From: Laetmonice hystrix
Lineage: Eukaryota
DNA: 64,000 bases
Assembly: GCA_965235115.1 (NCBI GenBank)
Contig: OZ249450.1
Coordinates: forward strand, 16,740,001 to 16,804,000
Direction of reading: 5' to 3'
In this document: in pieces, positions 1 through 25,386 of the stretch
Layout of the letters: each line of letters begins with the position of its first letter
How positions within the stretch are numbered: position 1 is the stretch's first letter
Notes under the pieces: generated by a model
What the model saw: only the letters and a program-made list of their open reading frames with translations
The model's database searches: none
What the model was told of the DNA's origin: nothing
Translations under genes and position numbers: made by a program

Positions 1-167
1 AAATCGATGATGCAATACTCACTGCATTGAAATAAATAAACCCCCACTCAAGGTAGTTATCACAGGGGGCGATACCATATGCCTAAATGCCTGAGCCTTT
101 AACTGGTGAGCCCAAGGTTGGCTGACGTGACTGGAGACCTCCACCTCGGTATACGTCCTATACTCAC

Positions 168-362
168 CCGCCGGAGCACCTCGCCAATCATGCCATTCCA
201 GGAACCATCCGAGGTCGGCCGTCCGTAGACGCCGTCTGACACCAACTGGAGGTCGTACGTTAAGCCCGCCCTGGAGGCGATGGCCGCCAGGAGGTCCGGT
301 ATGAACCCCTCGAACTCGTCAGGGCCCCCGTCTGTGTCCCTGACCATGAGGTACGGTGGCTC
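168..362 (-). CDS. Ionotropic glutamate receptor-family gene, S1 ligand-binding-domain exon (gene continues off the left edge)
   Basis: Translates EPPYLMVRDTDGGPDEFEGFIPDLLAAIASRAGLTYDLQLVSDGVYGRPTSDGSWNGMIGEVLRR, matching the iGluR S1 motifs (EPY-M, FEGF--DLL, DG-YG, W-GMIGE). Acceptor tgtttcag|GAG, donor CGG|GTGAGT, 195 bp, phase 0-0. Confidence 0.92.
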
Positions 363-1073
363 CTGAAACAGGGCCGGACGAGGTCACCATCAGGTCAGAC
401 TGTCTACCCCCCCCCCCCCAGGGTCAGGGAGGTCAAGGGGTGACCTGCCCGGAGTAGGGTATGACCTCACTGACGTGAGTAAAGTTCCATACATTACAAG
501 GTTCAATGTTACCTACGACTCCAACCGCCTCTAGAAACGTCAAATCTGACGTCGCATAATGCCAGTAGGTGGAGCCACTTACTTCAATGGTCGTCACTTT
601 GATCTTGTCTCCATCCCGCCGACTGCGCGTCTGTCCCCCTGGAGAGGCAAGACACAACCTACGTTACCATGGTTACACAAAGCGACGTCCTTAGAACATC
701 TTAATGGGGGGGGGGGTCGGGTCACAATCCTGAATGGGGCCTTGACCTATTATTTGAAAGAGAGATATGTCTGGGCGAGTGACAGTCTGGGGGCAATTCT
801 CCAGTAAAATTGCAAAAAGCCATAAAATAAAGGTGTAAAATAATAAACTTATAATAAAGGAATAGGCCCTGCATTGACAGTCATGAAAAAAAGTGTGTGG
901 TGTACTGCGGGCTTAAAATATATAGGGCTTAACAAAATATAAATGGTCCTGAGCAGGGGAGGGGGAGATCCGGACCTCCTGGACCCCCCCCCCCCCACCC
1001 CACCCGGATCCGCGCCTGATACTCTGTTGGTGTGGTGAGAGGTTTTGGGAGGTCCCGCCCACACCGCGAGCTC

Positions 1074-2030
1074 ACGTGCCACCCATTCTTGGAACGGTCA
1101 ATATACACCAGCGCCTACTGGCGGCACTTTTATGAAACCTTGAAAGCTGAAATTATTTTACATCAACACGCGTTCAACACGATTCGTTTGACAATTCACT
1201 TAGAATATGCGGGAAATCCAATCATCAATCATCTTTGACTTCTTAACTCCCGCTTGACACGCGATAATCATTATTTCGTTCGGCGCTATGAACGTTTGAA
1301 GCACCGAACCGAAGCGAAGTTCCGCCGAGCTGCCGGTGAATCGTGATTAGTTCCATAATTCCCGCTAGATGGCACGGAATGGGGTGCTGCCATCTATCCT
1401 TTTGACTTGGAACTAAATATTAGTTCAGAGTTAAAACGATAGATGGCAGCACCCTCTCCAGTGCCATCAGTGGCCGCCAGTGGCGCTACTGTCGGCTGTC
1501 AAAGTTGCGTAATGGCGGACTGTCTTGCGCTTCGCTTCGGCACTTCAAACATTAATAACGATGAACAGAAACATAACTATCGTATATCAAGAAGGGATAT
1601 CAAGCAGGGTATCAATGGCTGAAATGATCATAACATTTTATTAACGTTACAGATTGTAAGCGAATCTCCATGCAGCTCATTCTGCTATAATTTACGTGTG
1701 TTTACTTTTGGCGAACTCGGTCGCGGTTACCAAAATTCCCGCCAGTAGGCGCTGCCGCATATCGACTGTGTGGCCCGTTGCCGTTGTTGGTAGACAGGTC
1801 TTTTTTGTCAAAATGACTCATCCGCGACTGGGTGACAAGGAAGTAGGGCCTAAGTTATGCAATTTCCCGGAGATTTATAATCTGCGTTGGGGCATTTCGA
1901 ATTTTGCATAAATATTAGCCCTAATTTGCATATGATATTATTAGATGTAGGCCTACTAGGCCTATGGCCTAGTTGTTAACATCTATGGCCAGCGCGAAAT
2001 CTTGTGTGCCGACTGAGGCACAATTAAAAG
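1074..2030 (+). mobile_element. Non-autonomous Helentron/MITE-like element, copy 1
   Basis: Colinear with an inverted copy at 48225-49207 and a deleted copy at 50955-51130. Has a 16-bp internal inverted repeat (1109-1124 / 1739-1754), an internal hairpin at about 1386-1453 and a terminal GTGTGCC...GGCACA hairpin. No ORF of note. Superfamily assignment is inference. Confidence 0.6.
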
Positions 2031-3100
2031 TTGTTTCTTTTATAAAACACACAAGTGCTCTGACTGTAGACACCACGAATAGTGCGGAACACGGCATTGC
2101 TATATCGGCCTAGACTTTCCTATAGGGCATAGGCCTAATAGGCCTATAAGCGGTAGGCGGCACCTAGAGTAGGCCTACCTAGAGTTGGCAACTAGGGGCT
2201 ATAGACCCTTTATGCGGTGGGTGACGGGCGGTCAGCTAGTGGTTGTGAGTGAGGGTGTAGGGCGGTAGTCTCCATGGTTCTAAGCAAGGATGTGTTGTTT
2301 AGAGTTGTAATGGCGGTGCGATCTGAGAGAGGATGCTCAATGTATAGGGCCCAGTAGCTACTATAGGCCCCACTGAAGACGGTTGAGGTAGTGGACCAGG
2401 TAGGATGTGATATGTTAGTAGTTACACACGATTCCCGCATCGCGGCGCTGTACGACACTTGGACAGAGATCACGTGTTACTGGTTCCGGCGGAGTCTCGC
2501 CTAACCGCGCCGCCTATCGGACGGTGCGTGAATTATTGATGGGACGCCCGAAGTGAGCCCATGGGGAGAGGGTTGCCTCTCGTCGTGTTCAGTCGGTGCC
2601 CGGGCACCTCATGTTTTAAACATCACGATCAGCATTCTGGGATTCTGGTGTGCCATTCAGGGTCGCCTTGTCCATCTCTAACTGTAGGGGTTGATAGGAC
2701 CCGCATTCGTGCAAATGCTGACTCCATGAGACACGGTAAAGCAGTCATGAACTAGGCCTAATGGTTATTTTTAGTGGTAACCCTAGGAACCGGCTACCAA
2801 TGGCTGATTTCACTTAGACCAAGCTTAGACCAACACCTACCGTGAAACCCATCGGGAAGGTCAAGAGAAGGTCATAGCAATTTTGAGACCGTAAGGCTAT
2901 TCTGGCCGATACTCGCATCGCAAAGTATTTATATATTTATTGCAAATGCCCTTTCTGATTTGATCATGAACTGACGGACGCTGTGACGCTGAGAGAAGCC
3001 AAACATCGACATGATTCACTTTGCACAAGCATCTGTTTTCATCATGCTAGCACAGTTCATTTCCGGAGTCAGTCCATTTCTCGGGGACACGACATCTCTG

Positions 3101-4290
3101 GACCCACCCCATCCTCGGGAACATTTCATCGCCATCGCTCTACCCACCCTATCCTAGGGAACACTTCATGGCACATCTCTCTATACCCACCTCATCCTGG
3201 GGGACACTTCATGGCACATCGCTCTACCCGCCCCATCCTAGGGAACACTTCATGGCACATCTCTCTATACCCACCTCATCCTGGGGAACACTTCATGGCA
3301 CATCTCTCTATACCCACCTCATCCTGGGGAACACTTCATGGCACATCTCTCTATACCCACCCTATCCTAGGGAACACTTCATGGCACATCTCTCTATACC
3401 CACCTCATCCTGGGGAACACTTCATGGCACATCTCTCTACCCACCCTATCCTAGGGAACACTTCATGGCACATCTCTCTACCCGACTCATCCTGGGGAAC
3501 ACTTCATGGCACATCTCTCTACCCACCTCATCCTGGGGAACACTTCATGGCACATCTCTCTATACCCACCTCATCCTGGGGAACACTTCATGACACTTCC
3601 CTCTACCCCCTCCCCCCCCCATCCTAGGGAACACTTCATGGCTCATCTTTCTGCCCACCTCATCCTGGGGAACACTTCATGGCACATCTCTCTACCCACC
3701 CCATCCTGGGGAACACTTCATGGCACATCGCTCTGCCCGCCCCATCCCAGGGAACACTTCCCGGCACATTTGTCTACCCACCCCATCCTAGGGAACACTT
3801 CATGGCACATCTCTCTACCTACCCCATCCTAGGGAGCACTTCATGGCACATCTCTCTACCCACCCCATCCTAGGGAACATTTCATCGCCATCGCTCTACC
3901 CACCCCATCCTAGGGAACACTTCATGGCACATCCCTCTACCCACTACATCCTGGGGAACACTTCATGACACATCCCTCTACCCCCCCCCCCATCCTAGGG
4001 AACACTTCATGGCACATCCCTCTACCCACCTCATTCTGGGGAACACTTCATGACACATCCCTCTACCCCCCCCCCCCCCCATCCTAGGGAACACTTCATG
4101 GCACATCTTTCTGCCGGCCTAATCCTAGGGAACACTTCATGACACATCTCTCTACCCACCTCATCCTGGGGAACACTTCATGGTACATCTCTCTACCCAC
4201 CTCATCCTGGGGAACACTTCATAGCACATCTGTCTACCCGCCCCATCCTAGCGAACACTTAGGGCACATCTCTATATACCCACCCCATCC
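3101..4290. repeat. Minisatellite, 41-43 bp unit, about 28 copies
   Basis: Unit ATCCT(G/A)GGGAACACTTCATGGCACATCTCTCT(AT)ACCCACC(T/C)C read directly. It explains the repetitive ORFs at 2983-4645. Confidence 0.95.
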
Positions 4291-4670
4291 CAGTGGCGTC
4301 GGAACGTGTTGGAAAGTGGGTAGGCCACCAGGATTGGAAATGGAACCTGGCTCTATTGGGTTTACGGTGATTTCAAATGTTACTAATTTTTTCAACCTCC
4401 CAGCAGGAAAAGTGTATGTGTGTCATATCTCTCCCACCTATACCGAGTCCCGTCTTGGTAATTGGAGGTACCCTCACCGTCCAGGCCCTGCATGGCAGAC
4501 CTTAGGCCCACATAATCACACAGTACGTTATCTCAACCCCACGGTAATATACAGGAGGGCTAGCACAGCGGAACATCGCCATAACGGCCCGTCATTTTGT
4601 GGCTCCGTCCGGCCCAGTGTGCATTCAGTCAGTTTCTTGAACTGAAGCCACCTGCTAGTGTATAATGACG

Positions 4671-4684
4671 CCGCTAGATGGCGC
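4671..4684 (+). promoter_or_regulatory. Candidate CTCF binding site
   Basis: CCGCTAGATGGCGC, close to the CCASYAGRKGGCRS core. Motif match only. Confidence 0.45.
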
Positions 4685-5422
4685 TGAGTGTCATCAATCT
4701 CCCGGATGAACGAGCCAGGGAGCAGGTGCTCACTCCATGGATGCTATTTTTCCTTTCTGTCTAGAAATCTGGTGTCGACATTAACGTCATCTCACAAGCG
4801 GTGCCCGGATGAAAAGGCCTTTTAATGTTTCACAAAGAATTAAAATCTAGGTAGCAATTATGCTGAGTAGCACTCTTTATGGTTCTAGTAAATCTTAAAC
4901 GAGTTTGTAGATGGCGGTATTTTTGGCAGGTTGATTAGAGCGACGTTTGGCTGGTTTTTAAAATGATATCTATTTCAGCAAAATAAGACGAAGCAAGTGT
5001 TTCTCGTCGGGAGCTCATATATAATGTATAATCCTAGTATAACATTAATAGAGAATGCGGCGACGACAATAAAGGTTGGGTAAAACTGCTGCGAGCTGAT
5101 GGGTTGATGGCACAGATCCGCATTATAAAGGAGATATCAGATTATCTTTGCATTAGCAATTGTTTTACATGGTTTCCGTTACCGAAGGGACGACGGATAC
5201 AACACCTGTACATCATGTTTATTTTGACAGTCCAATTAATTTTTACATGCATAATAAATGTGTCACAGTTCACTCTTTGCTCAAGTCTGTCTGTGTCCCA
5301 CGTGTGCAAGCTGACGCTGTAATAAGCGGGCTATATCCACATACGCGATTTTACCCCAAACCGACGTCGTAGTGGCATCGCTAAACTAAACCGACGATAT
5401 AGCGTCAGTGGATTTGCCAAAC

Positions 5423-5839
5423 GCCCGGTTCATACTTCTGACGCCTACCTACGCCGACTGACGCCTACCTACGCCGACTGACGCCTACCTACGCCGACTG
5501 ACGCCTCCCTACGCCGACTGACCAGCGCGCGCAGTCGCCTACCGTTGGCGACTTTAATCGAGGTCGTCGGACGACCTCCCGGCGTCGAAGTATGAACACT
5601 CCAACGACGTCGTCGTTGACCTTACCTCAGTCTCTTTGGAGTCTTGCTGGGGTCAAGGACAAGGGTGATAATGCTGGATTCCCATTGGCCAGTTTGGCCA
5701 GTCGTTCGGAATTCGTCGCTCAGCGATCATTGACGCCGACCAACGCCTACTGGTCGCCTACCAGTAGACGTACAGTCGGCGTCAAATTTTCAGTCGCTGG
5801 TGAGTCGGCGTAGGAAGGCGTAAAAGTATGAACCGGCCT
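5423..5839. mobile_element. PIF/Harbinger-like MITE with an internal 20-bp tandem repeat
   Basis: Left end GCCCGGTTCATACTT..ACGCCTACCTACGCCGACT is the reverse complement of the right end AGTCGGCGTAGGAAGGCGTAAAAGTATGAACCGGCC. Four copies of CTGACGCCTACCTACGCCGA lie inside. TAA follows the right end. Confidence 0.6.
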
Positions 5840-6578
5840 TAAAAGCGGGTGAGACCATCCATCTAACGGCCCTAACTCTGTTTTTAGAGAATATTTATTG
5901 CCTCACTTGTTCTTATCTCTCAGTTCTTATCTCAAGGCGCTTTTATTTGCTTTTATTGGACCTTTCTGGAAATCAAATGAAATTACAGTATCTAATGGGC
6001 CCTTATAGACCCATATAAATTTATTATATTAACTTGTAGGGGTCTAATACTTTTATTGGTGTGAAGGGGTCTATTGTACACCCGCCATCTGGAGCATTAT
6101 CATTGCATGTTTCAGGTAACAATTACATTTTAATACCATCTAATGTGGAATTTTATTCTTATGTAGGAAACAAAGAAAGAAAAAATCAGTAGGCATATTA
6201 CATTTGTTCAGGCATATTCATAAACTGCCCCCTCATTCATTCTTGTCGGTCAACGACAGTTGCACCTGCTGTAGCAATGAAGCTCTACAATGGTGTTAGA
6301 CTTGTATAGACCCATATATTTCGAAAGTAAACACTTAAACTGCGGATAATGCGCGGTATAACTATTATAATTTAGTTCCCGACTTGGTCACGACATCTGT
6401 GATGAAACATCGTAATAACATCGCCTTGGTGGATAGCAGCATCGTGTATGTGGATACGCAAAATTTAGCATCGTTGGGGCATGAACGCTGACCAACCGAC
6501 GTGGACCATCGCATGCGTTGACGTTCAACAAGCGTCGGTTTTGCATCGTTTATGTGAATAGGGCCCTTTAACCAATTA

Positions 6579-6792
6579 AGGGCCTTATCCACTAAGCCGA
6601 TTTTCTTTGCGACGTCCATGCGATTTTGACATCACCCTTTTATTTTACTACTATTTTGAGATTAAAGGATGGAACCCGCCATTTCCTTAAACAGGGAAGG
6701 CCAGCCAGGAAAAATTTCAGCATGAAATTCCACCATTAAATCAAAAATCGCATGGCCGTTGCAAGGGAAATCGGTTTAGTGGATAAGGCCCT
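6579..6792. mobile_element. PIF/Harbinger-type MITE, 214 bp
   Basis: TIRs AGGGCCTTATCCACTAAGCCGATTT / AAATCGGTTTAGTGGATAAGGCCCT, flanked on both sides by TTA (6576-6578 and 6793-6795). Confidence 0.8.
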
Positions 6793-6847
6793 TTACAGTC
6801 TCATAGTCGGCGATCGCGGACCATGGCTCAGCCGACATAATCAACGT

Positions 6848-7562
6848 CATGAGAACACGGCCCAGCCGAAATATCATCATGAGAACATGACCCAGTCTAA
6901 ATCATCAGCTTCATGAGAACATGACCCAGCCTAAATCATCAGCTTCATGAAAACACGACCCAGTCTATCACCAGCTTCATGAGAACATGACCCAGTCTAT
7001 CATCAGCTTCATGAGAACAAGACCCAGTCTATCATCATCTTCATGAGAACATGACCCAGTCTAAATCATCATCTTCATGAAAACACGACCCAGTCTATCA
7101 CCAGCTTCATGAGAACATGACCCAGTCTAAATCATCAGCTTCATGAGAACATGACCCAGTCTAAATCATCAGCTTCATGAAAACACGACCCAGTCTATCA
7201 CCAGCTTCATGAGAACATGACCCAGTCTATCATCAGCTTCATGAGAACAAGACCCAGTCTATCATCATCTTCATGAGAACATGACCCAGTCTAAATCATC
7301 ATCTTCATGAAAACACGACCCAGTCTATCACCAGCTTCATGAGAACATGACCCAGTCTAAATCATCAGCTTCATGAGAACATGACCCAGTCTAAATCATC
7401 ATCTTCATGAGAACATGACCCAGTCTAAATCACCAGCTTCATGAGAACATGACCCAGTCTAAATCATCAGCTTCATGAGAACAAGACCCAGTCTAAATCA
7501 TCATCTTCATGAAAACACGACCCAGTCTATCACCAGCTTCATGAGAACATGACCCAGTCTAA
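6848..7562. repeat. Minisatellite, 32-34 bp unit, about 21 copies
   Basis: Unit CATGAGAACATGACCCAGTCTA(AA)TCATCAGCTT. The variant CATGAAAACACG recurs at a 230-bp period. Confidence 0.95.
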
Positions 7563-9121
7563 CCTGACCTGAGGCTTCATTGGAGCGTGTTCTCTATCTC
7601 CGTTATAATCATGGACCTACCGGACTGATATTTCCTTGCCCTGTTGAGTATCTGAGATAGATTATACGTAGAATATTTTTAAGAATGATGCATAATGCAG
7701 TATAGGTAAATATTGCCAAACAGTAGGCTACTATACTTTAAGGCTGGTATTTTGCGGGAACTCGCCTCACCATATTAGACCCTTTACCTATATTCATTTC
7801 ACTCAGAATACCATCTAACCGACTCGGCTTTCTTTCATTTCCATGGGTCACAAACAACCCATCTCCATGGCAACACTAACGGACGCCGACAGACCACGTC
7901 GTTACCGTTTTTTGTTCTGCTGTTCGCGCCCTGAGGCACGTCTGTCCCATAAAGTCGTCAGGGATGACATTTTATGACCCCGCGATCAAAATATTAATGA
8001 TGCAGATATAAAGAAGGTTCAGAAAGAAGCGCCACCAAGTCAGCGTGCATGACTTAGACAGAGAAACACATATTTCTATTTCTCTTCTCATCATGCAGCG
8101 TTGCGAATTGCTGGCCAAAGTTTTTCTCCGCGTTAATAGAGGAAATCTATCTGTATTAGACCCTGTTAAGCCACGGAGCTAACGAGGCGAACACTTGACG
8201 ACGTCAGGTTTTGTAGGGGGATAGGGGTGGAAAATAGCGGGGGAGGGGGATCCTTGTACCAACTCGGCGATGACGTCAGTAAGACGTTACCGACGCCTGT
8301 AGCAGGAGATGATCGACGACAGAACCTTGAGATGACGCCTGCAGGACGTTCAGACTATAGCTGAGTTGATGCCGTGCCGTGTCGGCCCTTTTGTCGTCGT
8401 CATTACATCACAGTCCGTGATATAACGTCCCTAGACGTCGCCACGGATCCTCGAGCCGTTTCTCATATGTGTCTTCCTTGTTTGTCACAGATAACTCAGC
8501 TATAATAGTTTTCCTGGCAGCCGTCGTTAGGCCGGGCGGCAGGCGGCCCCGGTACCCGCCGAACACATCACAGGCCGTCCCGCAGTCCGTGGCTGACCTT
8601 GCAATGCCCTCTAAATCTTCCTGCCATATAAACCGCAATCACACACCTGCGGCCAGGCCCTCGGGAGGAGACTACTACATTGAGAACACCTTAACTAATG
8701 TGGTTTTCTCCGCACGTTTTCTGTGGTAGAGCAATTTCTGGATGATAATGACGTCATTTACAGCGAAACCTCTGCATATACGGTGTTCTTCCTGGCCAGA
8801 ATGTAAGTGTGACCTTGCTAGCCGCCGCATCTAGGGGCACTCGAGAAATCTATTATCTTTATAGGGGCCACTTAATAAGGTTAATCACACCCTCAACCAC
8901 CTGAAGTTAATCACCCCCACCCCACCCCCACCCCCCGCCCCGCCCGGCAGGCTTTGTGTCCTCCGTGTGTCCAGGATGGACGCCGGTAGGTCCGTAACCA
9001 GATGCGCCACCTGGGGGGGGGGGATTCCCTTTCCCAACAGTTCAGCATAGAGTAATGAAAAAAGTGCCCTGAATTTCTATAGGGCCCGGACACCTCTCGA
9101 TAAGGGAGCGGTCCCTCCTGG

Positions 9122-9333
9122 TTACGGGCCTGTAGGAAATTATTACGCCAGGCGTATCCTGACGGTCCTGTATAGCAGTTACGCCAGGCGTATCCTGACG
9201 GGCCTGTAGCAGTTACGCCAGGCGTATCCTGACGGGCCTGTAGCAGTTACGCCAGGCGTATCCTGACGGGCCTGTAGCAGTTACGCCAGGCGTATCCTGA
9301 CGGGCCTGTAGCAGTTACGCCAGGCGTATCCTG
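9122..9333. repeat. Minisatellite, 34 bp x about 6
   Basis: TTACGCCAGGCGTATCCTGACGGGCCTGTAGCAG at 9143, 9179, 9213, 9247, 9281 and 9315. Confidence 0.95.
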
Positions 9334-10067
9334 TTGTTGGTGTTTCTCGACGACTGCGCAACTTGACATCTGACGTTACGACCAGCGAGGTGACATAATT
9401 ATGTCCTTACACAACCGACTTAAGTCTTGAACTTAAGTCACCCTTCGAGAACCAGGCTGGACGCCAGCTTAGACTAAAAGGACGCGCGCGCACAACAATC
9501 CACAAATCAGTCTCTGCAATATTTTGTAAGTGATTGAATTATTTCCAAGTCGTAGAACGGACATTGTGACATGCCCTTTGGTCGCAGGCCGGGGCCTTAG
9601 ACAACAACTAATATGGCTCACAATCCTAGGAAAATGACCATCACCCACCCACCTTCAAAGTAGACACTGTCATAAGTACTATTTTGTATATCATAGTTTA
9701 CCAACTAGGTTTTAATAGCTATAGCGTAGACGTAGCATAAATTGTTGAAATCGCCGGATTACAAATACCAATCCCACGAGGGTGAAACATCTGGCTCTAA
9801 CTAGTTCTGCGCGATTTGCCTGATTTTTCTTCCAGCCGGTATAACATTTGGTTGTGTAGGGGTGTCTATACAAGTGTATGTTTACCGTCACTGACTTCAT
9901 CCCCCTACCCAGGGGAGTTCGCGCTATTGTTTCCTTTACCCTGAAATACCTCTTGAAGTTTCGATTAAGGTTTTAAAAGGACGAGAAGACTTGGGGGGAA
10001 ATGTATGTGGGATTAGTGCCTGGATCCTAGAAATACCTCCGTGACCCCCCGTACGGTCCTGCTATAC

Positions 10068-10166
10068 CTGAAGTATACCGCTATAGGTGACATAGAAGGT
10101 CTTACCCTGAGACAGATGAAGGTGTCCGGCGAGCAACAGAAGCAGAAACCCGTAGACGGCTTCCAT
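10068..10166 (-). CDS. First coding exon (signal peptide plus start of S1) of the iGluR-family gene
   Basis: MEAVYGFLLLLLAGHLHLSQG-KTFYVTYSGILQ. Context accATGG, hydrophobic signal-peptide core, phase-0 donor CAG|GTATAG. Joined to 362 it gives KTFYVTYSGILQEPPYLM, matching the S1 opening strand (KTxxVTTILExPYVM). Confidence 0.72.
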
Positions 10167-23094: not shown

Positions 23095-25386
23095 ATGGAC
23101 TGGCTTGTCATTGTTACCGCTTGGTTGACAGCAATCTCAGTCGGAATCCATGCACTTCACAAAGATACCGGACAAAGTGGCACCGGACAAATTAGTACCG
23201 GACAAAGTAGCGCCGGGGAGATTGGTAAGCGTCAGCCGTATACTGATGGAGCTGACGCTTTAAGCTCCAGGCTTAGGAAGGACGAGTTCCTGGGTGATAC
23301 GGAGGATGAGGTTGAGCCGGCCGAGCAAGACGGTCTGGGAGCTCCTGTCAGTTATATTGACCTGGGGATACGTCACGGTCAACCAAAGTATGGAGTCGAA
23401 AGTCACCAGGAGGACATAGGACACGGGACATGGGACATGGGGCATGGAGAGAAAGGTCAAGGTCAGCGGGACATGGGACATGGAGATAAAGGTCAAGGTC
23501 AGCGAGGATATAATCCCCGACACGGACAACAAGGTCACGGCCAAGGGGGACATAGCCACACGCAAAAGGGACGCAGTCACGTGCACAGTGACGTGCATAA
23601 GGGGCACAGTGACGTACATTCGTTCAAACATATCGGACATGACGTTGACGTTGACGCACCCAATGGTGACGGAGTGTTACGTCACGGTGGTCACGGGAAG
23701 ACGAACTCCTGGGAGTACGGATACGGAGAACTGGAGCATGAACTGGCGCGCAGTCAGGCTGGAGACCGCTATGACGGTCATGACAAGCAGGGTCACGACG
23801 GTCATGACGGGAGTAGTCATGACGGGCAGGGATACGTCTACGGCCACTTGGTGGAAGACAATGAATTTTGGGACCAGGATCGAGGTCACGGAGACGCGGA
23901 CAGTGGACCTGCGCAGGACGGTCCGGATCTCAGAGATGGGGAGCTGGTGGCTAGTCACGTGATGTACCCAAACCGAGGTCAATCAGGAGAGGTCACCGGA
24001 AGCACTGGGCGTCATTACAAGGGGAATTCCCCTGGTGGTGGCCGGGGGAATCACAATCAGGACGTGCATGGCCGGAAATGGGAGAGCCGAGGAAAATACA
24101 AGGGGCAAAGAGAGGAAACGGAAGAGGAGGAAGCGAACGAAACGGAAGAAGGGGAGTTTACTGAGGACTTTATGGAGCTCAGTGAAGAACACCACAGACT
24201 CTGGGAGACATTACGTCAGAAGCATGCGAAGGCGATGCAAGAAAGACTCAGTAAAAATGAGATGAAACTAAAGACCCAAGCACTCCAAGGGATGAATTAC
24301 AGCGACCAGTATTCTGAAAGATCACGTCCGAGGCAGGATACGCGTGGAGGGCAAAGGCGGGTAGGACCTCCGCCCGAGGCAAAGAAATACATGCCCAGAG
24401 AACGAAGTCATGGCCGCCGTGGTTACCTTGGTGACGTGCCGCGTCGACCTCTGGGAAGAACTGCTCGAAAAGACAACCATGACAGGTTTGACCGGACCGA
24501 CTCAAAACACAACCATCACAGCACGAGGAGGCACAGTCACGGTAGGCATCGGCAAGCCGACAGACAGATCTACGATAAACATATCCGCCGAGGTCATGGC
24601 CGCCCTGCGCAGGCGCACACTCGTGGGAGGAAATATATTAAACAAGGTGAAAAAAGGAGAAATCGTGGCCCCATGGAACCCCGGCACGTCAGGGAGGATA
24701 GAGAACTGATAGAGTCTGATAGAGAACAACGGTATCACGACAGAACCCATCAGAAGAATGTCAGACATGTCAAGAACAGACACGTTGGGCGCCATCCTAA
24801 ACGGAAGCATTTTTACAGGGAAAATGGCCACCGGAACCATCGACTTGAAGGGACGCCTGCGCATTCACCCGACCATGACCGGAGTTATACGAACCATAGG
24901 CAGGGCGGCAAGACCGTTGAGTCACGTGACCGGCGGCGGAAGGCTGAGCATATCCCGGAAGGAAGGAAATACGAGAACAAAGGATTCTGGGAAGACGAGC
25001 GGGTGAATGTTATAGGTCCTGCAGATGACGAAGCTTGGAACAAAAATAGCCAGGTGGAGAGAAAGAGTTACACGGACATAGCAATCGAGGACAGTGACGG
25101 CCACAGTCACGGCCGTGACGGTCACGTGTCTGCTAAGAGCACCTTTGGTGACGGAGGCTACGGTCACGGAACCAACAGTTACGGTATGCGCAACTTCGCC
25201 AAATCTGTCTACGGAAAGGGCAATTCTGGGAAGTCCCTTGGCGGCCACTATATCATGGGGAACTCGGCGTTCCAGAAGGCGCTGCGTACGGGGTTCTCCG
25301 TGCCCGTGCACGAGTACGACGAGAACAAGGACGGGGTGCCGGACGCCCTCGACATGAACCGTGACGGCAAACTGGACGACCTCTGA
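23095..25386 (+). CDS. Secreted His/Gly/Asp- and Arg/His-rich low-complexity protein, intronless, 763 aa
   Basis: Uninterrupted 2.3-kb ORF. Signal peptide MDWLVIVTAWLTAISVGIHA, GHG/GHD-rich acidic part, poly-Glu block, Arg/His-rich part, and C-terminal DENKDG..DMNRDG motifs. ATG 23095 is preferred over 22990 because the TATA box lies between them. Confidence 0.85.
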   Translation: MDWLVIVTAWLTAISVGIHALHKDTGQSGTGQISTGQSSAGEIGKRQPYTDGADALSSRLRKDEFLGDTEDEVEPAEQDGLGAPVSYIDLGIRHGQPKYGVESHQEDIGHGTWDMGHGEKGQGQRDMGHGDKGQGQRGYNPRHGQQGHGQGGHSHTQKGRSHVHSDVHKGHSDVHSFKHIGHDVDVDAPNGDGVLRHGGHGKTNSWEYGYGELEHELARSQAGDRYDGHDKQGHDGHDGSSHDGQGYVYGHLVEDNEFWDQDRGHGDADSGPAQDGPDLRDGELVASHVMYPNRGQSGEVTGSTGRHYKGNSPGGGRGNHNQDVHGRKWESRGKYKGQREETEEEEANETEEGEFTEDFMELSEEHHRLWETLRQKHAKAMQERLSKNEMKLKTQALQGMNYSDQYSERSRPRQDTRGGQRRVGPPPEAKKYMPRERSHGRRGYLGDVPRRPLGRTARKDNHDRFDRTDSKHNHHSTRRHSHGRHRQADRQIYDKHIRRGHGRPAQAHTRGRKYIKQGEKRRNRGPMEPRHVREDRELIESDREQRYHDRTHQKNVRHVKNRHVGRHPKRKHFYRENGHRNHRLEGTPAHSPDHDRSYTNHRQGGKTVESRDRRRKAEHIPEGRKYENKGFWEDERVNVIGPADDEAWNKNSQVERKSYTDIAIEDSDGHSHGRDGHVSAKSTFGDGGYGHGTNSYGMRNFAKSVYGKGNSGKSLGGHYIMGNSAFQKALRTGFSVPVHEYDENKDGVPDALDMNRDGKLDDL

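What the first reader, a model, noticed from the sequence alone, without database searches (positions are those of the whole stretch)
168..10166. iGluR-family gene apparently lacking the whole amino-terminal domain (signal peptide spliced straight into S1)
Seen: the exon at 10068-10166 encodes a signal peptide then KTFYVTYSGILQ and ends phase 0. The exon at 168-362 starts phase 0 with EPPYLM. The join KTFYVTYSGILQEPPYLM reproduces the first S1 strand (KTVVVTTILESPYVM in AMPA-type receptors), so the ligand-binding domain begins right at the cleavage site. The 9.7-kb intron holds repeats and MITEs, and I found no ATD-like exons in it. Known: canonical animal iGluRs have a roughly 400-aa ATD, while ATD-less forms include vertebrate kainate-binding proteins and bacterial GluR0. 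Inference: this is either a minimal invertebrate channel or, if the downstream TM exons are missing, a secreted glutamate-binding decoy analogous to AChBP.
Basis: partly seen in the sequence, partly recalled or inferred. Interest (0 to 1): 0.78.

Follow-up and report, generated by a model that had tools for sequence, protein, structure and literature searches.

The report
Pore-less glutamate-receptor binding-domain protein
This worm gene makes only the glutamate-binding "clamshell" of a synaptic glutamate receptor, with a signal peptide in front and a short greasy membrane tether behind but no ion channel, and it belongs to an undescribed family found in several annelids.

Summary
It also missed the bigger point, which lay just left of the window.

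Spliced contigs from one run (X4) show exon 1 ending at window 10106, not 10068. It joins a 56-nt micro-exon (583-638) that encodes the true first strand (KIKVTTIE). That micro-exon then joins the exon at 168-362. "KTFYVTYSGILQ" is intron.

The next exon runs from the end of S1 straight into S2 with no M1-M3. It aligns without gaps to engineered S1S2 crystallisation constructs. The last exon ends with a stop after a short hydrophobic tail.

The product is 316 aa: signal peptide, complete ligand-binding domain, and a GPI-signal-like or minimal transmembrane tail. There is no ATD and no pore. The ligand contacts, the "glutamate-type" residues (G653, T655, Y732 equivalents) and the domain disulfide are all kept.

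Nine paralogs on the same chromosome share the build. So do about 300-aa proteins named in two annelids, and two further database entries that look annelid from their accession style. One of the named annelids also has the same exon structure.

I read it as a cell-surface glutamate-binding protein that cannot conduct. Its role (buffer, decoy or receptor partner) is untested. I found no paper describing such proteins.

The parts
10106..10166 (-). Coding part of exon 1 (61 nt). ATG at 10166, signal peptide MEAVYGFLLLLLAGHLHLSQ plus the first base of codon 21. Donor G|gtaaga at 10105-10104.
   Evidence: Sequence. The loose end of the X4 spliced contig equals the reverse complement of this exon's 3' end. 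The count of G's across the join fixes the boundary. The model translates cleanly. No in-frame ATG lies in the 300 nt upstream.
10068..10105 (-). It is the start of intron 1 in the observed transcript.
   Evidence: The X4 contig leaves exon 1 at 10106 and continues in the micro-exon. Homologs carry V/ATTI-E/A-E-x-PY here, as the micro-exon does.
639..10105 (-). Intron 1 (about 9.5 kb, gt..ag). It is repeat-rich and holds no ATD-like or pore-like coding sequence.
   Evidence: tblastn with 15 ATDs gives no hit better than E=0.4. Channel queries hit only S1 and S2. No PF01094 or PF00060 hit lies here. Repeat copies and very high word depth at window 1020-1860.
583..638 (-). 56-nt micro-exon, codons 21-39 (GGQTRSRRDGDKIKVTTIE). 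It carries a dibasic RSRR motif and the true first beta-strand of S1.
   Evidence: X4 joint 1861->2082 on L001, and the alignment of that contig up to window 639. Acceptor ctctccag, donor gtaagt. An equivalent micro-exon exists in the Lamellibrachia ortholog gene.
363..582 (-). Intron 2 (220 nt, gt..ag).
   Evidence: Skipped in the X4 contig and present in DNA run X1.
168..362 (-). Third coding exon (195 nt, codons 40-104), the first half of S1 (EPPYLM...WNGMIGEVLRR). F56 sits at the GluA2 Y450 position.
   Evidence: Translation. PF10613 positions 10-76, E=1.3e-15. PDB matches to GluK4, GluK1 and GluD2 ligand-binding domains, E down to 3.9e-12.
1..167 (-). First 167 nt of intron 3 (356 nt in all). 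The rest of the gene lies left of the window. Exon 4 is G000:C20:16739623-16739811 (L004 9623-9811): end of S1, the direct S1-S2 junction, and the start of S2. Exon 5 is G000:C20:16738744-16739193 (L004 8744-9193): the rest of S2, the hydrophobic tail and the stop.
   Evidence: Sequence of L004. The join between these last two exons is confirmed by X4 joint 693->1123 on L001, and the contig runs on past the left end of the laid stretch. Pfam and PDB matches. Full model of 316 aa with all introns GT..AG. The join from the 168-362 exon to exon 4 is inferred from canonical sites, phase and the unbroken Pfam profile (positions 76|77). No contig shows it directly.

Best explanation
The gene encodes a 316-aa protein made of a signal peptide, a short linker with a dibasic RSRR motif, a complete iGluR ligand-binding clamshell (S1 joined directly to S2) and a 17-residue hydrophobic C-terminal tail ending in RR. 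It has no amino-terminal domain and no M1-M3 pore, so it cannot be an ion channel.

The likely mechanism is as follows. The protein is translocated into the secretory pathway. It is held on the outer face of the plasma membrane by its tail, either exchanged for a GPI anchor or kept as a minimal M4-derived helix. There it binds a free alpha-amino acid, most likely L-glutamate, by clamshell closure.

With nothing to gate, it would act as a surface binding protein. It could be a local glutamate buffer or decoy, or a ligand-sensing partner of other membrane proteins.

Shown: the exon structure, the absence of ATD and pore, the intact binding-site residues, the fold, and conservation of the family. 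Inferred: secretion, mode of tethering, ligand identity and physiological role.
For: Transcript structure. Spliced X4 contigs link exon 1, the micro-exon and the S1 exon. They also link the last two exons and continue past the stop into the 3' UTR. The same-sample DNA run X1 lacks these joints.

No pore. Exon 4 reads ...FMSFGTTVLTKKP-ASFHSMAELAASTNLQYG... in one open frame. It aligns without gaps (residues 2-61) to GluK3, GluK1 and GluA2 S1S2 constructs, across the point where their artificial linker replaces M1-M3. No PF00060 hit lies anywhere on this chromosome. The channel queries P0010 and P0097 hit only S1 and S2 in 52 kb.

No ATD.

Ligand-binding domain intact. PF10613 is matched across two exons. 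S2 matches GluA2 at E=1.9e-23. P112, T114, R119, G164, T166, E215 and Y242 occupy GluA2 positions 478, 480, 485, 653, 655, 705 and 732, and C228/C283 form the domain disulfide. G/S/T653 with T655 and Y732 is the published glutamate-type signature (PMC12226733). These residues are invariant in nine family members that are only 33-44% identical to the reference member P0003.

Fold. The AlphaFold2 model of P0003, the 53%-identical homolog, has pLDDT 87.6. It superposes on GluA2 S1S2 domains at target-normalised TM 0.87-0.91 and about 2 A rmsd.

Tail. In this gene, its paralogs and most full-length homologs with this build, a hydrophobic stretch ends within 7 residues of the stop in nearly all (one paralog has 16 after it, a few homologs lack a tail). 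Channel relatives have 41-98 residues after M4.

Family. Nine paralogs on C20 share the same S1-S2 fusion within one exon. Homologs of 300-331 aa occur in Lamellibrachia and Paralvinella and in marine transcript contigs. The Lamellibrachia gene has the same exon layout, including the micro-exon.
Against: No binding, localisation or anchoring experiment exists.

The kind of run X4 is not on record. That it is RNA is inferred from its spliced contigs.

The join between the 168-362 exon and exon 4 is not covered by a listed contig.

This gene's tail is less hydrophobic (Kyte-Doolittle 13-residue window 1.41) than those of relatives (2.0-3.3). It ends in RR, which is unusual for a GPI signal, so it could be a weak anchor or be lost.

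No SignalP or GPI predictor was available.

The GluA2 dimer-interface positions 483, 486 and 493 are E, L and E here (read by eye from the PLTIT/PITIS register). That argues against a classical back-to-back dimer and leaves the quaternary state unknown.

Confidence: 0.75

Rival explanations
1. It is a freely secreted, soluble glutamate-binding decoy, a true AChBP analogue. The C-terminal hydrophobic stretch would be removed or would not work as an anchor.
For: This gene's tail is the weakest of the family (KD13 1.41). Some LBD-only-looking homologs (P0153, P0070) end a few residues after the last Cys with no tail.
Against: A terminal hydrophobic segment is kept in 9 of 9 paralogs and in most homologs with this build. 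Two paralogs place a long stalk between the domain and the tail (about 70 and about 300 aa), which only makes sense for a tethered protein.
Confidence: 0.15
2. It is an accessory subunit. The M4-like tail or the clamshell docks onto pore-forming iGluR or IR tetramers and modulates their gating or assembly, rather than acting alone.
For: The tail sits where pre-M4/M4 lies in channel relatives, and several family members keep an Arg just after it, as after M4. An ATD-less full channel (P0010, Tubulanus) groups with this clade in the tree. M4 is known from the AMPA-receptor literature to pack against neighbouring subunits (my own knowledge, not tested here).
Against: The dimer-interface positions of GluA2 are not conserved (read by eye). 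The hydrophobic stretch starts 10-15 residues closer to the last Cys than M4 does in channels. No interaction was tested.
Confidence: 0.15
3. It is a decaying remnant of a channel gene that lost its pore exons, that is, a transcribed pseudogene without function.
For: Loss of M1-M3 is what a deletion would produce. The tail hydrophobicity is reduced in this copy.
Against: The 316-codon frame is open and all four introns are GT..AG. The gene is expressed. The same architecture is held by paralogs only 29-37% identical and by homologs in other annelids, with invariant ligand-contact residues and the disulfide. That pattern needs long-term purifying selection.
Confidence: 0.06
4. It is a minimal ATD-less ion channel of the kainate-binding-protein, IR or GluR0 type.
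For: ATD-less channels exist, for example P0010 of Tubulanus. An earlier scan note reports one in this genome (not checked).
Against: S1 and S2 are contiguous in one exon. There is no SYTANLAAF-type M3, M1 or P-loop in 52 kb, and the only hydrophobic windows are the signal peptide and the weak tail.
Confidence: 0.02
5. It is a bacterial periplasmic amino-acid-binding protein gene, from contamination or horizontal transfer.
For: There are weak PF00497 (SBP_bac_3) matches. JGI's automatic name for one homolog is 'ABC-type amino acid transport substrate-binding protein'.
Against: The gene has four spliceosomal introns and lies on a 24-Mb chromosome. PF10613 scores far better than PF00497. The nearest solved and predicted structures are animal AMPA and kainate domains at 36-40% identity, while bacterial GlnH-type models score a lower TM of 0.64.
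Confidence: 0.01

Closest known systems
Engineered S1S2 ligand-binding cores of AMPA and kainate receptors (e.g. GluA2 S1S2J, GluK1-3 S1S2 crystallisation constructs)
   Same: Same domain content. S1 is fused to S2 by a very short linker in place of M1-M3. Exon 4 aligns gap-free across the artificial GT linker. The homolog model superposes at target-normalised TM 0.87-0.91 and 36-37% identity.
   Different: Those are laboratory constructs. This is a natural, spliced, expressed gene with its own signal peptide and a C-terminal hydrophobic tail.
Vertebrate kainate-binding proteins and other ATD-less channel subunits (protostome IRs, prokaryotic GluR0, Tubulanus P0010)
   Same: No amino-terminal domain. 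The signal peptide leads almost directly into S1.
   Different: Those keep the transmembrane pore region (M1-M3, and M4 except in GluR0). This protein has none.
Bacterial family-3 solute-binding proteins (GlnH, HisJ or LAOBP type; lipid-anchored in Gram-positives)
   Same: A stand-alone bilobed amino-acid-binding clamshell outside the cell, in some cases lipid-tethered. Weak PF00497 matches. Structural TM about 0.64.
   Different: Not the closest kin. The sequence, the disulfide and the WNGM and KWW motifs are of the animal AMPA/kainate type, the gene has introns, and no ABC-transporter partner is implied.
Acetylcholine-binding protein (AChBP) of molluscs
   Same: The same idea in another receptor superfamily: a natural protein consisting only of the ligand-binding domain of a ligand-gated channel. 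In AChBP it acts as a transmitter decoy (my own knowledge).
   Different: Unrelated fold (Cys-loop pentamer). AChBP is soluble and glia-secreted, whereas this protein carries a membrane-tether-like tail. A decoy role is untested here.
AMPA/kainate-type iGluRs of invertebrates ('glutamate receptor 1/2-like')
   Same: The nearest full-length relatives by sequence, at 35-46% identity over S1 and S2. Ligand-contact residues are shared.
   Different: In the tree, a supported split (97/92) separates the core AMPA+kainate channels from the group holding this gene, its paralogs, most LBD-only homologs and the ATD-less channel P0010. The channels have ATD, pore and a cytoplasmic tail.

Membership tests
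Ionotropic glutamate receptor superfamily (by descent of the ligand-binding domain) | Bilobed S1-S2 ligand-binding domain matching Lig_chan-Glu_bd (PF10613) and solved iGluR ligand-binding domains | tested here: met
   PF10613 positions 10-76 (E=1.3e-15) and 77-114 (E=3e-10). PDB GluA2 at E=1.9e-23, and GluK3 and GluK4 at about 4-5e-12. The homolog model matches GluA2 S1S2 at target-normalised TM 0.87-0.91.
Ionotropic glutamate receptor superfamily (by descent of the ligand-binding domain) | Alpha-amino-acid contacts (GluA2 P478, T480, R485, E705) and the domain disulfide C718-C773 | tested here: met
   P112, T114, R119, E215 and C228/C283. All except the acidic 705 position (Asp in one of the nine) are invariant across nine family members.
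Ionotropic glutamate receptor (functional ligand-gated channel) | Pore module M1-P-loop-M3 with a SYTANLAAF-like motif (PF00060) | tested here: not met
   S1 runs into S2 inside one exon. No PF00060 hit on C20. No tblastn hit to M1-M3 of P0010 or P0097 in C20:16700001-16752000.
Ionotropic glutamate receptor (functional ligand-gated channel) | M4 helix followed by a cytoplasmic C-terminal domain | tested here: not met
   Only a 17-residue, weakly hydrophobic stretch followed by RR and the stop. Channel relatives have 41-98 residues after M4.
Canonical animal iGluR (AMPA, kainate, delta, NMDA) | Amino-terminal domain of about 400 aa (PF01094 ANF_receptor) | tested here: not met
   A spliced contig joins the signal-peptide exon to the micro-exon and on to S1. 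No PF01094 hit lies near the gene. 15 ATD queries give nothing better than E=0.4.
Kainate-binding proteins / ATD-less channel subunits | No ATD but complete transmembrane domains | tested here: not met
   The ATD is absent (met), but the transmembrane pore is absent too.
Glutamate-selective ligand-binding domains (published residue rule) | G/S/T at 653, T at 655 and Y at 732 (GluA2 numbering) | tested here: met
   G164, T166 and Y242 by alignment to GluA2 and GluK3. The rule is quoted from PMC12226733. It is a prediction rule, not a binding assay.
GPI-anchored surface proteins | N-terminal signal peptide plus a C-terminal signal (small omega-site residues, short polar spacer, terminal hydrophobic stretch, no cytoplasmic tail) | tested here: inconclusive
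   By inspection only. CGSAG, then an 11-residue spacer, then LVWTLATMSSVLYFTI, then RR. Relatives have stronger tails ending within 7 residues of the stop in nearly all. No GPI or signal-peptide predictor was available, and the terminal Arg residues also fit a minimal transmembrane anchor.
Bacterial SBP family 3 | Closest sequence kinship to bacterial periplasmic binding proteins (PF00497 above its threshold as the best family) | tested here: not met
   PF00497 scores 15.6-28.4 bits, only one of the three exon pieces exceeds its 26.4-bit cutoff, and it is always weaker than PF10613 where both match. The nearest relatives are animal iGluRs. The gene has introns.

The most novel reading that the evidence does not exclude
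Annelids, and perhaps other spiralians, keep an old, expanded family of natural 'S1S2' proteins. These are pore-less, ATD-less, membrane-tethered glutamate-binding domains derived from AMPA/kainate-like receptors by loss of M1-M3. On this reading they shape extracellular glutamate signalling or amino-acid chemosensation without conducting ions, making them a glutamatergic counterpart of AChBP. The family would have escaped notice because iGluR surveys drop sequences that lack the M3 motif.
Probability: 0.5. Interest if true: 0.85.

Novelty: new variant of a known kind. Interest (0 to 1): 0.7.

Why it matters
Ionotropic glutamate receptors are thought to have arisen by fusing a bacterial-type binding protein to a potassium-channel-like pore. 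This family looks like the reverse event in animals: the binding domain set free again and kept for a long time. If it does bind glutamate at the cell surface, it is a new kind of player in glutamate signalling or amino-acid sensing in worms. It would also be a natural, presumably well-folding, stand-alone receptor domain useful for structural work and biosensor design. The case also exposes a blind spot. The main metazoan iGluR survey excluded sequences without the SYTANLAAF motif (PMC6307864), so pore-less relatives were filtered out by design.

Tried and rejected
- A motif scan of six-frame ORFs left of the window found nothing because the exons are short. Pfam genome scans and direct reading replaced it.
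I corrected it after the read-laying.
- The run search listed no holder on record as RNA. Run X4 nevertheless gave spliced contigs.
- The window's own protein was not among the listed matches of the representative search (best match 57% identity, a fragment), so I could not look it up by identity.
- I did not paste the spliced 316-aa protein into any tool. The 53%-identical homolog P0003 was folded instead.
- The word-indexed homolog searches with P0003 and alignment A1 returned few, mostly unnamed, proteins.
- I considered the C8:16.68 Mb locus as an eleventh pore-less copy and rejected it. Its S1 exon continues into M1.
- Five literature searches and two paper read-throughs found no description of natural pore-less iGluR binding-domain proteins. 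Absence from this library is not proof.
- The Atlas searches showed no large eukaryotic cluster with this build.
- dN/dS was not attempted. The available relatives are at most 57% identical, so synonymous sites are saturated.
- No complex prediction was run, because no specific binding partner is claimed.

Full report
**Observation**

The minus strand at window 168-362 is a clean coding exon. It has a tttcag acceptor and a gtgagt donor, and it reads in phase 0 from EPPYLM to GEVLRR. It matches Pfam Lig_chan-Glu_bd positions 10-76 at E=1.3e-15 and solved kainate and delta receptor ligand-binding domains at E about 1e-11.

At 10166 an ATG in a good context (A at -3, G at +4) opens a typical signal peptide. 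No in-frame ATG lies in the 300 nt upstream. These parts of the observation are real and far beyond chance.

The run search returned four runs from one sample. Three look like whole-genome DNA. The fourth, X4 (58 Mb of contigs), gave contigs with GT..AG-bounded gaps that the DNA run X1 lacks, so I treat it as RNA.

One X4 contig joins window 362 to a short exon whose donor is at 583|582. It runs to window 639 and then continues with 63 loose letters. The listed part of these is the reverse complement of the 3' end of exon 1, up to ...CATCTGTCTCAG.

Counting the G's at the join puts the end of exon 1 at 10106 (donor G|gtaaga) and the start of the micro-exon at 638 (acceptor ctctccag). So exon 1 is 61 nt and the micro-exon is 56 nt. 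Together they encode 39 residues: MEAVYGFLLLLLAGHLHLSQ followed by GGQTRSRRDGDKIKVTTIE.

The true first S1 strand, KIKVTTIE-EPPYLM, comes from the micro-exon and matches the V/ATTI-x-E-x-PY of all relatives.

**The ATD is indeed absent**

The same contig links the signal-peptide exon to S1 with only 19 codons between them. No ANF_receptor hit lies near the gene, although only 115 of 229 candidates were scored. tblastn with the ATDs of 15 full-length relatives against the 14-kb locus gives only scattered hits at E>=0.4 on both strands.

In the 53%-identical homolog P0003, a 2,071-nt transcript contig has an in-frame stop upstream of its ATG. The ATD-less N-terminus is therefore complete there.

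**The main finding lies just left of the window**

The window is G000:C20:16740001-16804000, and I fetched the flank. The next exon (C20:16739623-16739811) reads EADVAAAPITISEERLKVLDFTEPFMSFGTTVLTKKP and then, in the same open frame, ASFHSMAELAASTNLQYGLVKDGITE. That is the end of S1 followed at once by the start of S2.

This exon aligns without a single gap to the engineered S1S2 crystallisation constructs of GluK3, GluK1, GluK2 and GluA2. The alignment runs across the spot where their artificial linker replaces M1-M3.

The last exon (C20:16738744-16739193) carries the rest of S2, which matches GluA2 at E=1.9e-23. It then reads ...KWWQADNKCGSAGNSINLALSSRHLVWTLATMSSVLYFTIRR and stops.

An X4 contig confirms the join between these two exons and runs on past the stop and beyond the left end of the laid stretch. 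The join from the 168-362 exon into the S1-S2 exon is not covered by a listed contig. I infer it from canonical sites, phase 0 on both sides and the unbroken Pfam profile (positions 76|77).

The full model is 316 codons and all four introns are GT..AG. No PF00060 (pore) hit lies anywhere on chromosome C20. Two channel queries hit only S1 and S2 in 52 kb around the gene.

**What is kept**

By the tool alignments to GluA2 and GluK3, with numbering:

| GluA2 position | 450 | 478 | 480 | 485 | 653 | 655 | 705 | 732 | 718-773 disulfide |
|---|---|---|---|---|---|---|---|---|---|
| This protein | F56 | P112 | T114 | R119 | G164 | T166 | E215 | Y242 | C228-C283 |

R485 and D/E705 hold the alpha-carboxylate and alpha-amino groups of any amino-acid ligand. 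G/S/T653 with T655 and Y732 is the published glutamate-type signature, as opposed to the glycine/D-serine type (PMC12226733).

In an alignment of nine full-length family members only 33-44% identical to the reference member P0003, the residues at 478, 480, 485, 653, 655 and 732 and the two cysteines are invariant. The 705 position is acidic in all nine (Asp in one). I read that as purifying selection on a working binding pocket.

I did not paste the spliced protein into the tools, so I folded P0003 with that alignment. The model has pLDDT 87.6 and pTM 0.79, with low confidence only in the signal peptide and the spacer before a terminal helix. Foldseek places it on GluA2 S1S2 domains at target-normalised TM 0.87-0.91 and about 2 A rmsd.

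**The tail**

In this gene, its paralogs and most full-length homologs with this build, a hydrophobic stretch ends within 7 residues of the stop in nearly all. One paralog has 16 residues after it. Channel relatives carry 41-98 residues after M4.

The residues just after the last cysteine are small (CGSAG, CSAG, CSSA...). A polar spacer of about 10 residues and 15-18 hydrophobic residues follow. This is the layout of a GPI-attachment signal.

Several members, however, keep an Arg at the very end (…TIRR, …ALLR, …LLRRL, …LLRL). That also fits a minimal M4-derived transmembrane anchor. Two paralogs insert a long stalk between domain and tail, one of about 300 aa rich in S/T/P and one of about 70 aa rich in K/S. 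This argues for a tethered ectodomain.

I could not run a GPI or signal-peptide predictor. This gene's tail is the least hydrophobic of the set. I put GPI against transmembrane anchor at roughly 55:45, and free secretion at about 15%.

**A family, not an accident**

Chromosome C20 has ten loci with S1 hits and no pore hit. About 35 loci on other chromosomes have a PF00060 hit next to S1. The one other candidate, on C8, turned out to keep M1.

In all nine C20 paralogs the end of S1 and S2 lie in one exon with a short linker and a terminal hydrophobic tail. They are 29-37% identical to this gene over the S2-containing match and dispersed between 3.3 and 18.5 Mb.

Outside this genome, the representative search found many proteins of about 300 aa with S2 starting near residue 160-190. 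Those I retrieved have the same build. Two carry names:

- KAI0217460.1 of Lamellibrachia satsuma (324 aa).
- KAK2159004.1 of Paralvinella palmiformis (331 aa).

The AlphaFold DB search adds a 316-aa 'DgyrCDS1714' entry and a 272-aa R7U7X4 entry. From their accession style I take these to be Dimorphilus and Capitella proteins. That is my own knowledge, since the organism column is masked.

The Lamellibrachia gene has the same layout: a signal-peptide exon, a micro-exon of about 60 nt ending in VTTIA flanked by introns of about 8-10 kb, an S1 exon starting EPPY, and an exon that spans the S1-S2 junction. An earlier scan note calls this genome an annelid, which fits.

**Phylogeny**

In a maximum-likelihood tree of the ligand-binding domains (39 rows, 258 columns), a supported split (97/92) sets the core AMPA+kainate channels apart. 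The other side holds this gene, its paralogs, most pore-less homologs and an ATD-less but complete channel of the nemertean Tubulanus (P0010).

The inner branches are weak, and the bootstrap had not fully settled. A single origin of pore loss is therefore possible but not shown. Four pore-less-looking proteins group with kainate or AMPA channels and may be separate losses or assembly artefacts.

**Mechanism**

Shown: a secretory-type N-terminus, a complete and conserved glutamate-type clamshell, no pore, no ATD, a terminal hydrophobic tail, transcription, and conservation across annelids.

Inferred: the protein sits on the cell surface and binds glutamate or a close amino acid by domain closure. 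Having nothing to gate, it acts as a binding protein. It could buffer or decoy transmitter or dissolved amino acids, or present its ligand state to another membrane protein.

The GluA2 dimer-interface positions 483, 486 and 493 are E, L and E here (read by eye). I would therefore not assume the classical back-to-back dimer.

**Comparison with the known, and novelty**

The closest things are the engineered S1S2 cores (same content, man-made) and kainate-binding proteins, IRs and GluR0 (no ATD, but with a pore). Bacterial family-3 binding proteins have the same stand-alone logic but are not the nearest kin. AChBP embodies the same idea in another superfamily.

Searches of the paper library found no description of natural pore-less iGluR domains. 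The main metazoan survey states that sequences with fewer than four conserved SYTANLAAF residues were excluded (PMC6307864), which would have removed this family.

The proteins do exist in databases, as 'hypothetical protein', 'Ionotropic glutamate receptor' or, wrongly, 'ABC-type amino acid transport substrate-binding protein'. I therefore rate it a new variant of a known kind. The architecture is well supported. The function is open.

Noticed in passing
window 583-638 (micro-exon), and homologs P0160, P0012, P0019, P0035, P0198: A dibasic R-x-K/R-R motif sits between the signal peptide and the first S1 strand: RSRR here, and RTRR, RQKR, RSKR, RTKR and RQKR in the relatives. It looks like a furin-type processing site, which would remove a very short propeptide. 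Other members (P0003, P0036, P0073) lack it.
   Followed up: partly
window 1019-1200 and about 1020-1860 (L001 2520-3360): A dispersed repeat lies inside intron 1. At least 39 other copies at 82-94% identity are spread over many chromosomes. DNA-contig word depth there is up to about 50,000, against about 45 for unique sequence.
   Followed up: partly
L012 (G000:C20:5743001-5753000), paralog at 5.746 Mb; L016, paralog at 11.95 Mb: Two pore-less paralogs carry long low-complexity stalks between the binding domain and the terminal hydrophobic tail. One is about 300 aa and rich in S/T/P (mucin-like). The other is about 70 aa and rich in K/S.
   Followed up: partly
P0010 (Tubulanus polymorphus XP_074643234.1, 496 aa): This is an ATD-less but otherwise complete channel subunit (signal peptide, S1, M1-M3, S2, M4, short tail). 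It groups with the pore-less clade rather than with the AMPA/kainate channels, so it may be an intermediate form.
   Followed up: partly
P0039, P0151, P0153, P0070: These are pore-less-looking proteins of about 260-306 aa from marine catalogues. They group with kainate-type (first three) or AMPA-type (last) channels. Two have only a weakly hydrophobic C-terminal stretch and two have none. They could be independent pore losses, soluble forms or mis-assemblies.
   Followed up: no
L019 (G000:C8:16679001-16689000): An iGluR-like gene has S1 hits but no PF00060 hit nearby. Its S1 exon continues into an M1-like segment, and S2 lies about 3.4 kb further on. It is probably a channel with a divergent pore.
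   Followed up: partly
L001 1297 (G000:C20:16739797): A heterozygous T>C appears in the DNA run, and the C allele is in the spliced contig. It is a synonymous GCA>GCG (Ala109) change in the S1-S2 exon and probably explains why the transcript contig breaks 11 nt before the exon's 5' end.
   Followed up: yes
window 23095-25386: Another first-reader note on this window describes a secreted His/Gly block-polyampholyte protein. I did not examine it.
   Followed up: no
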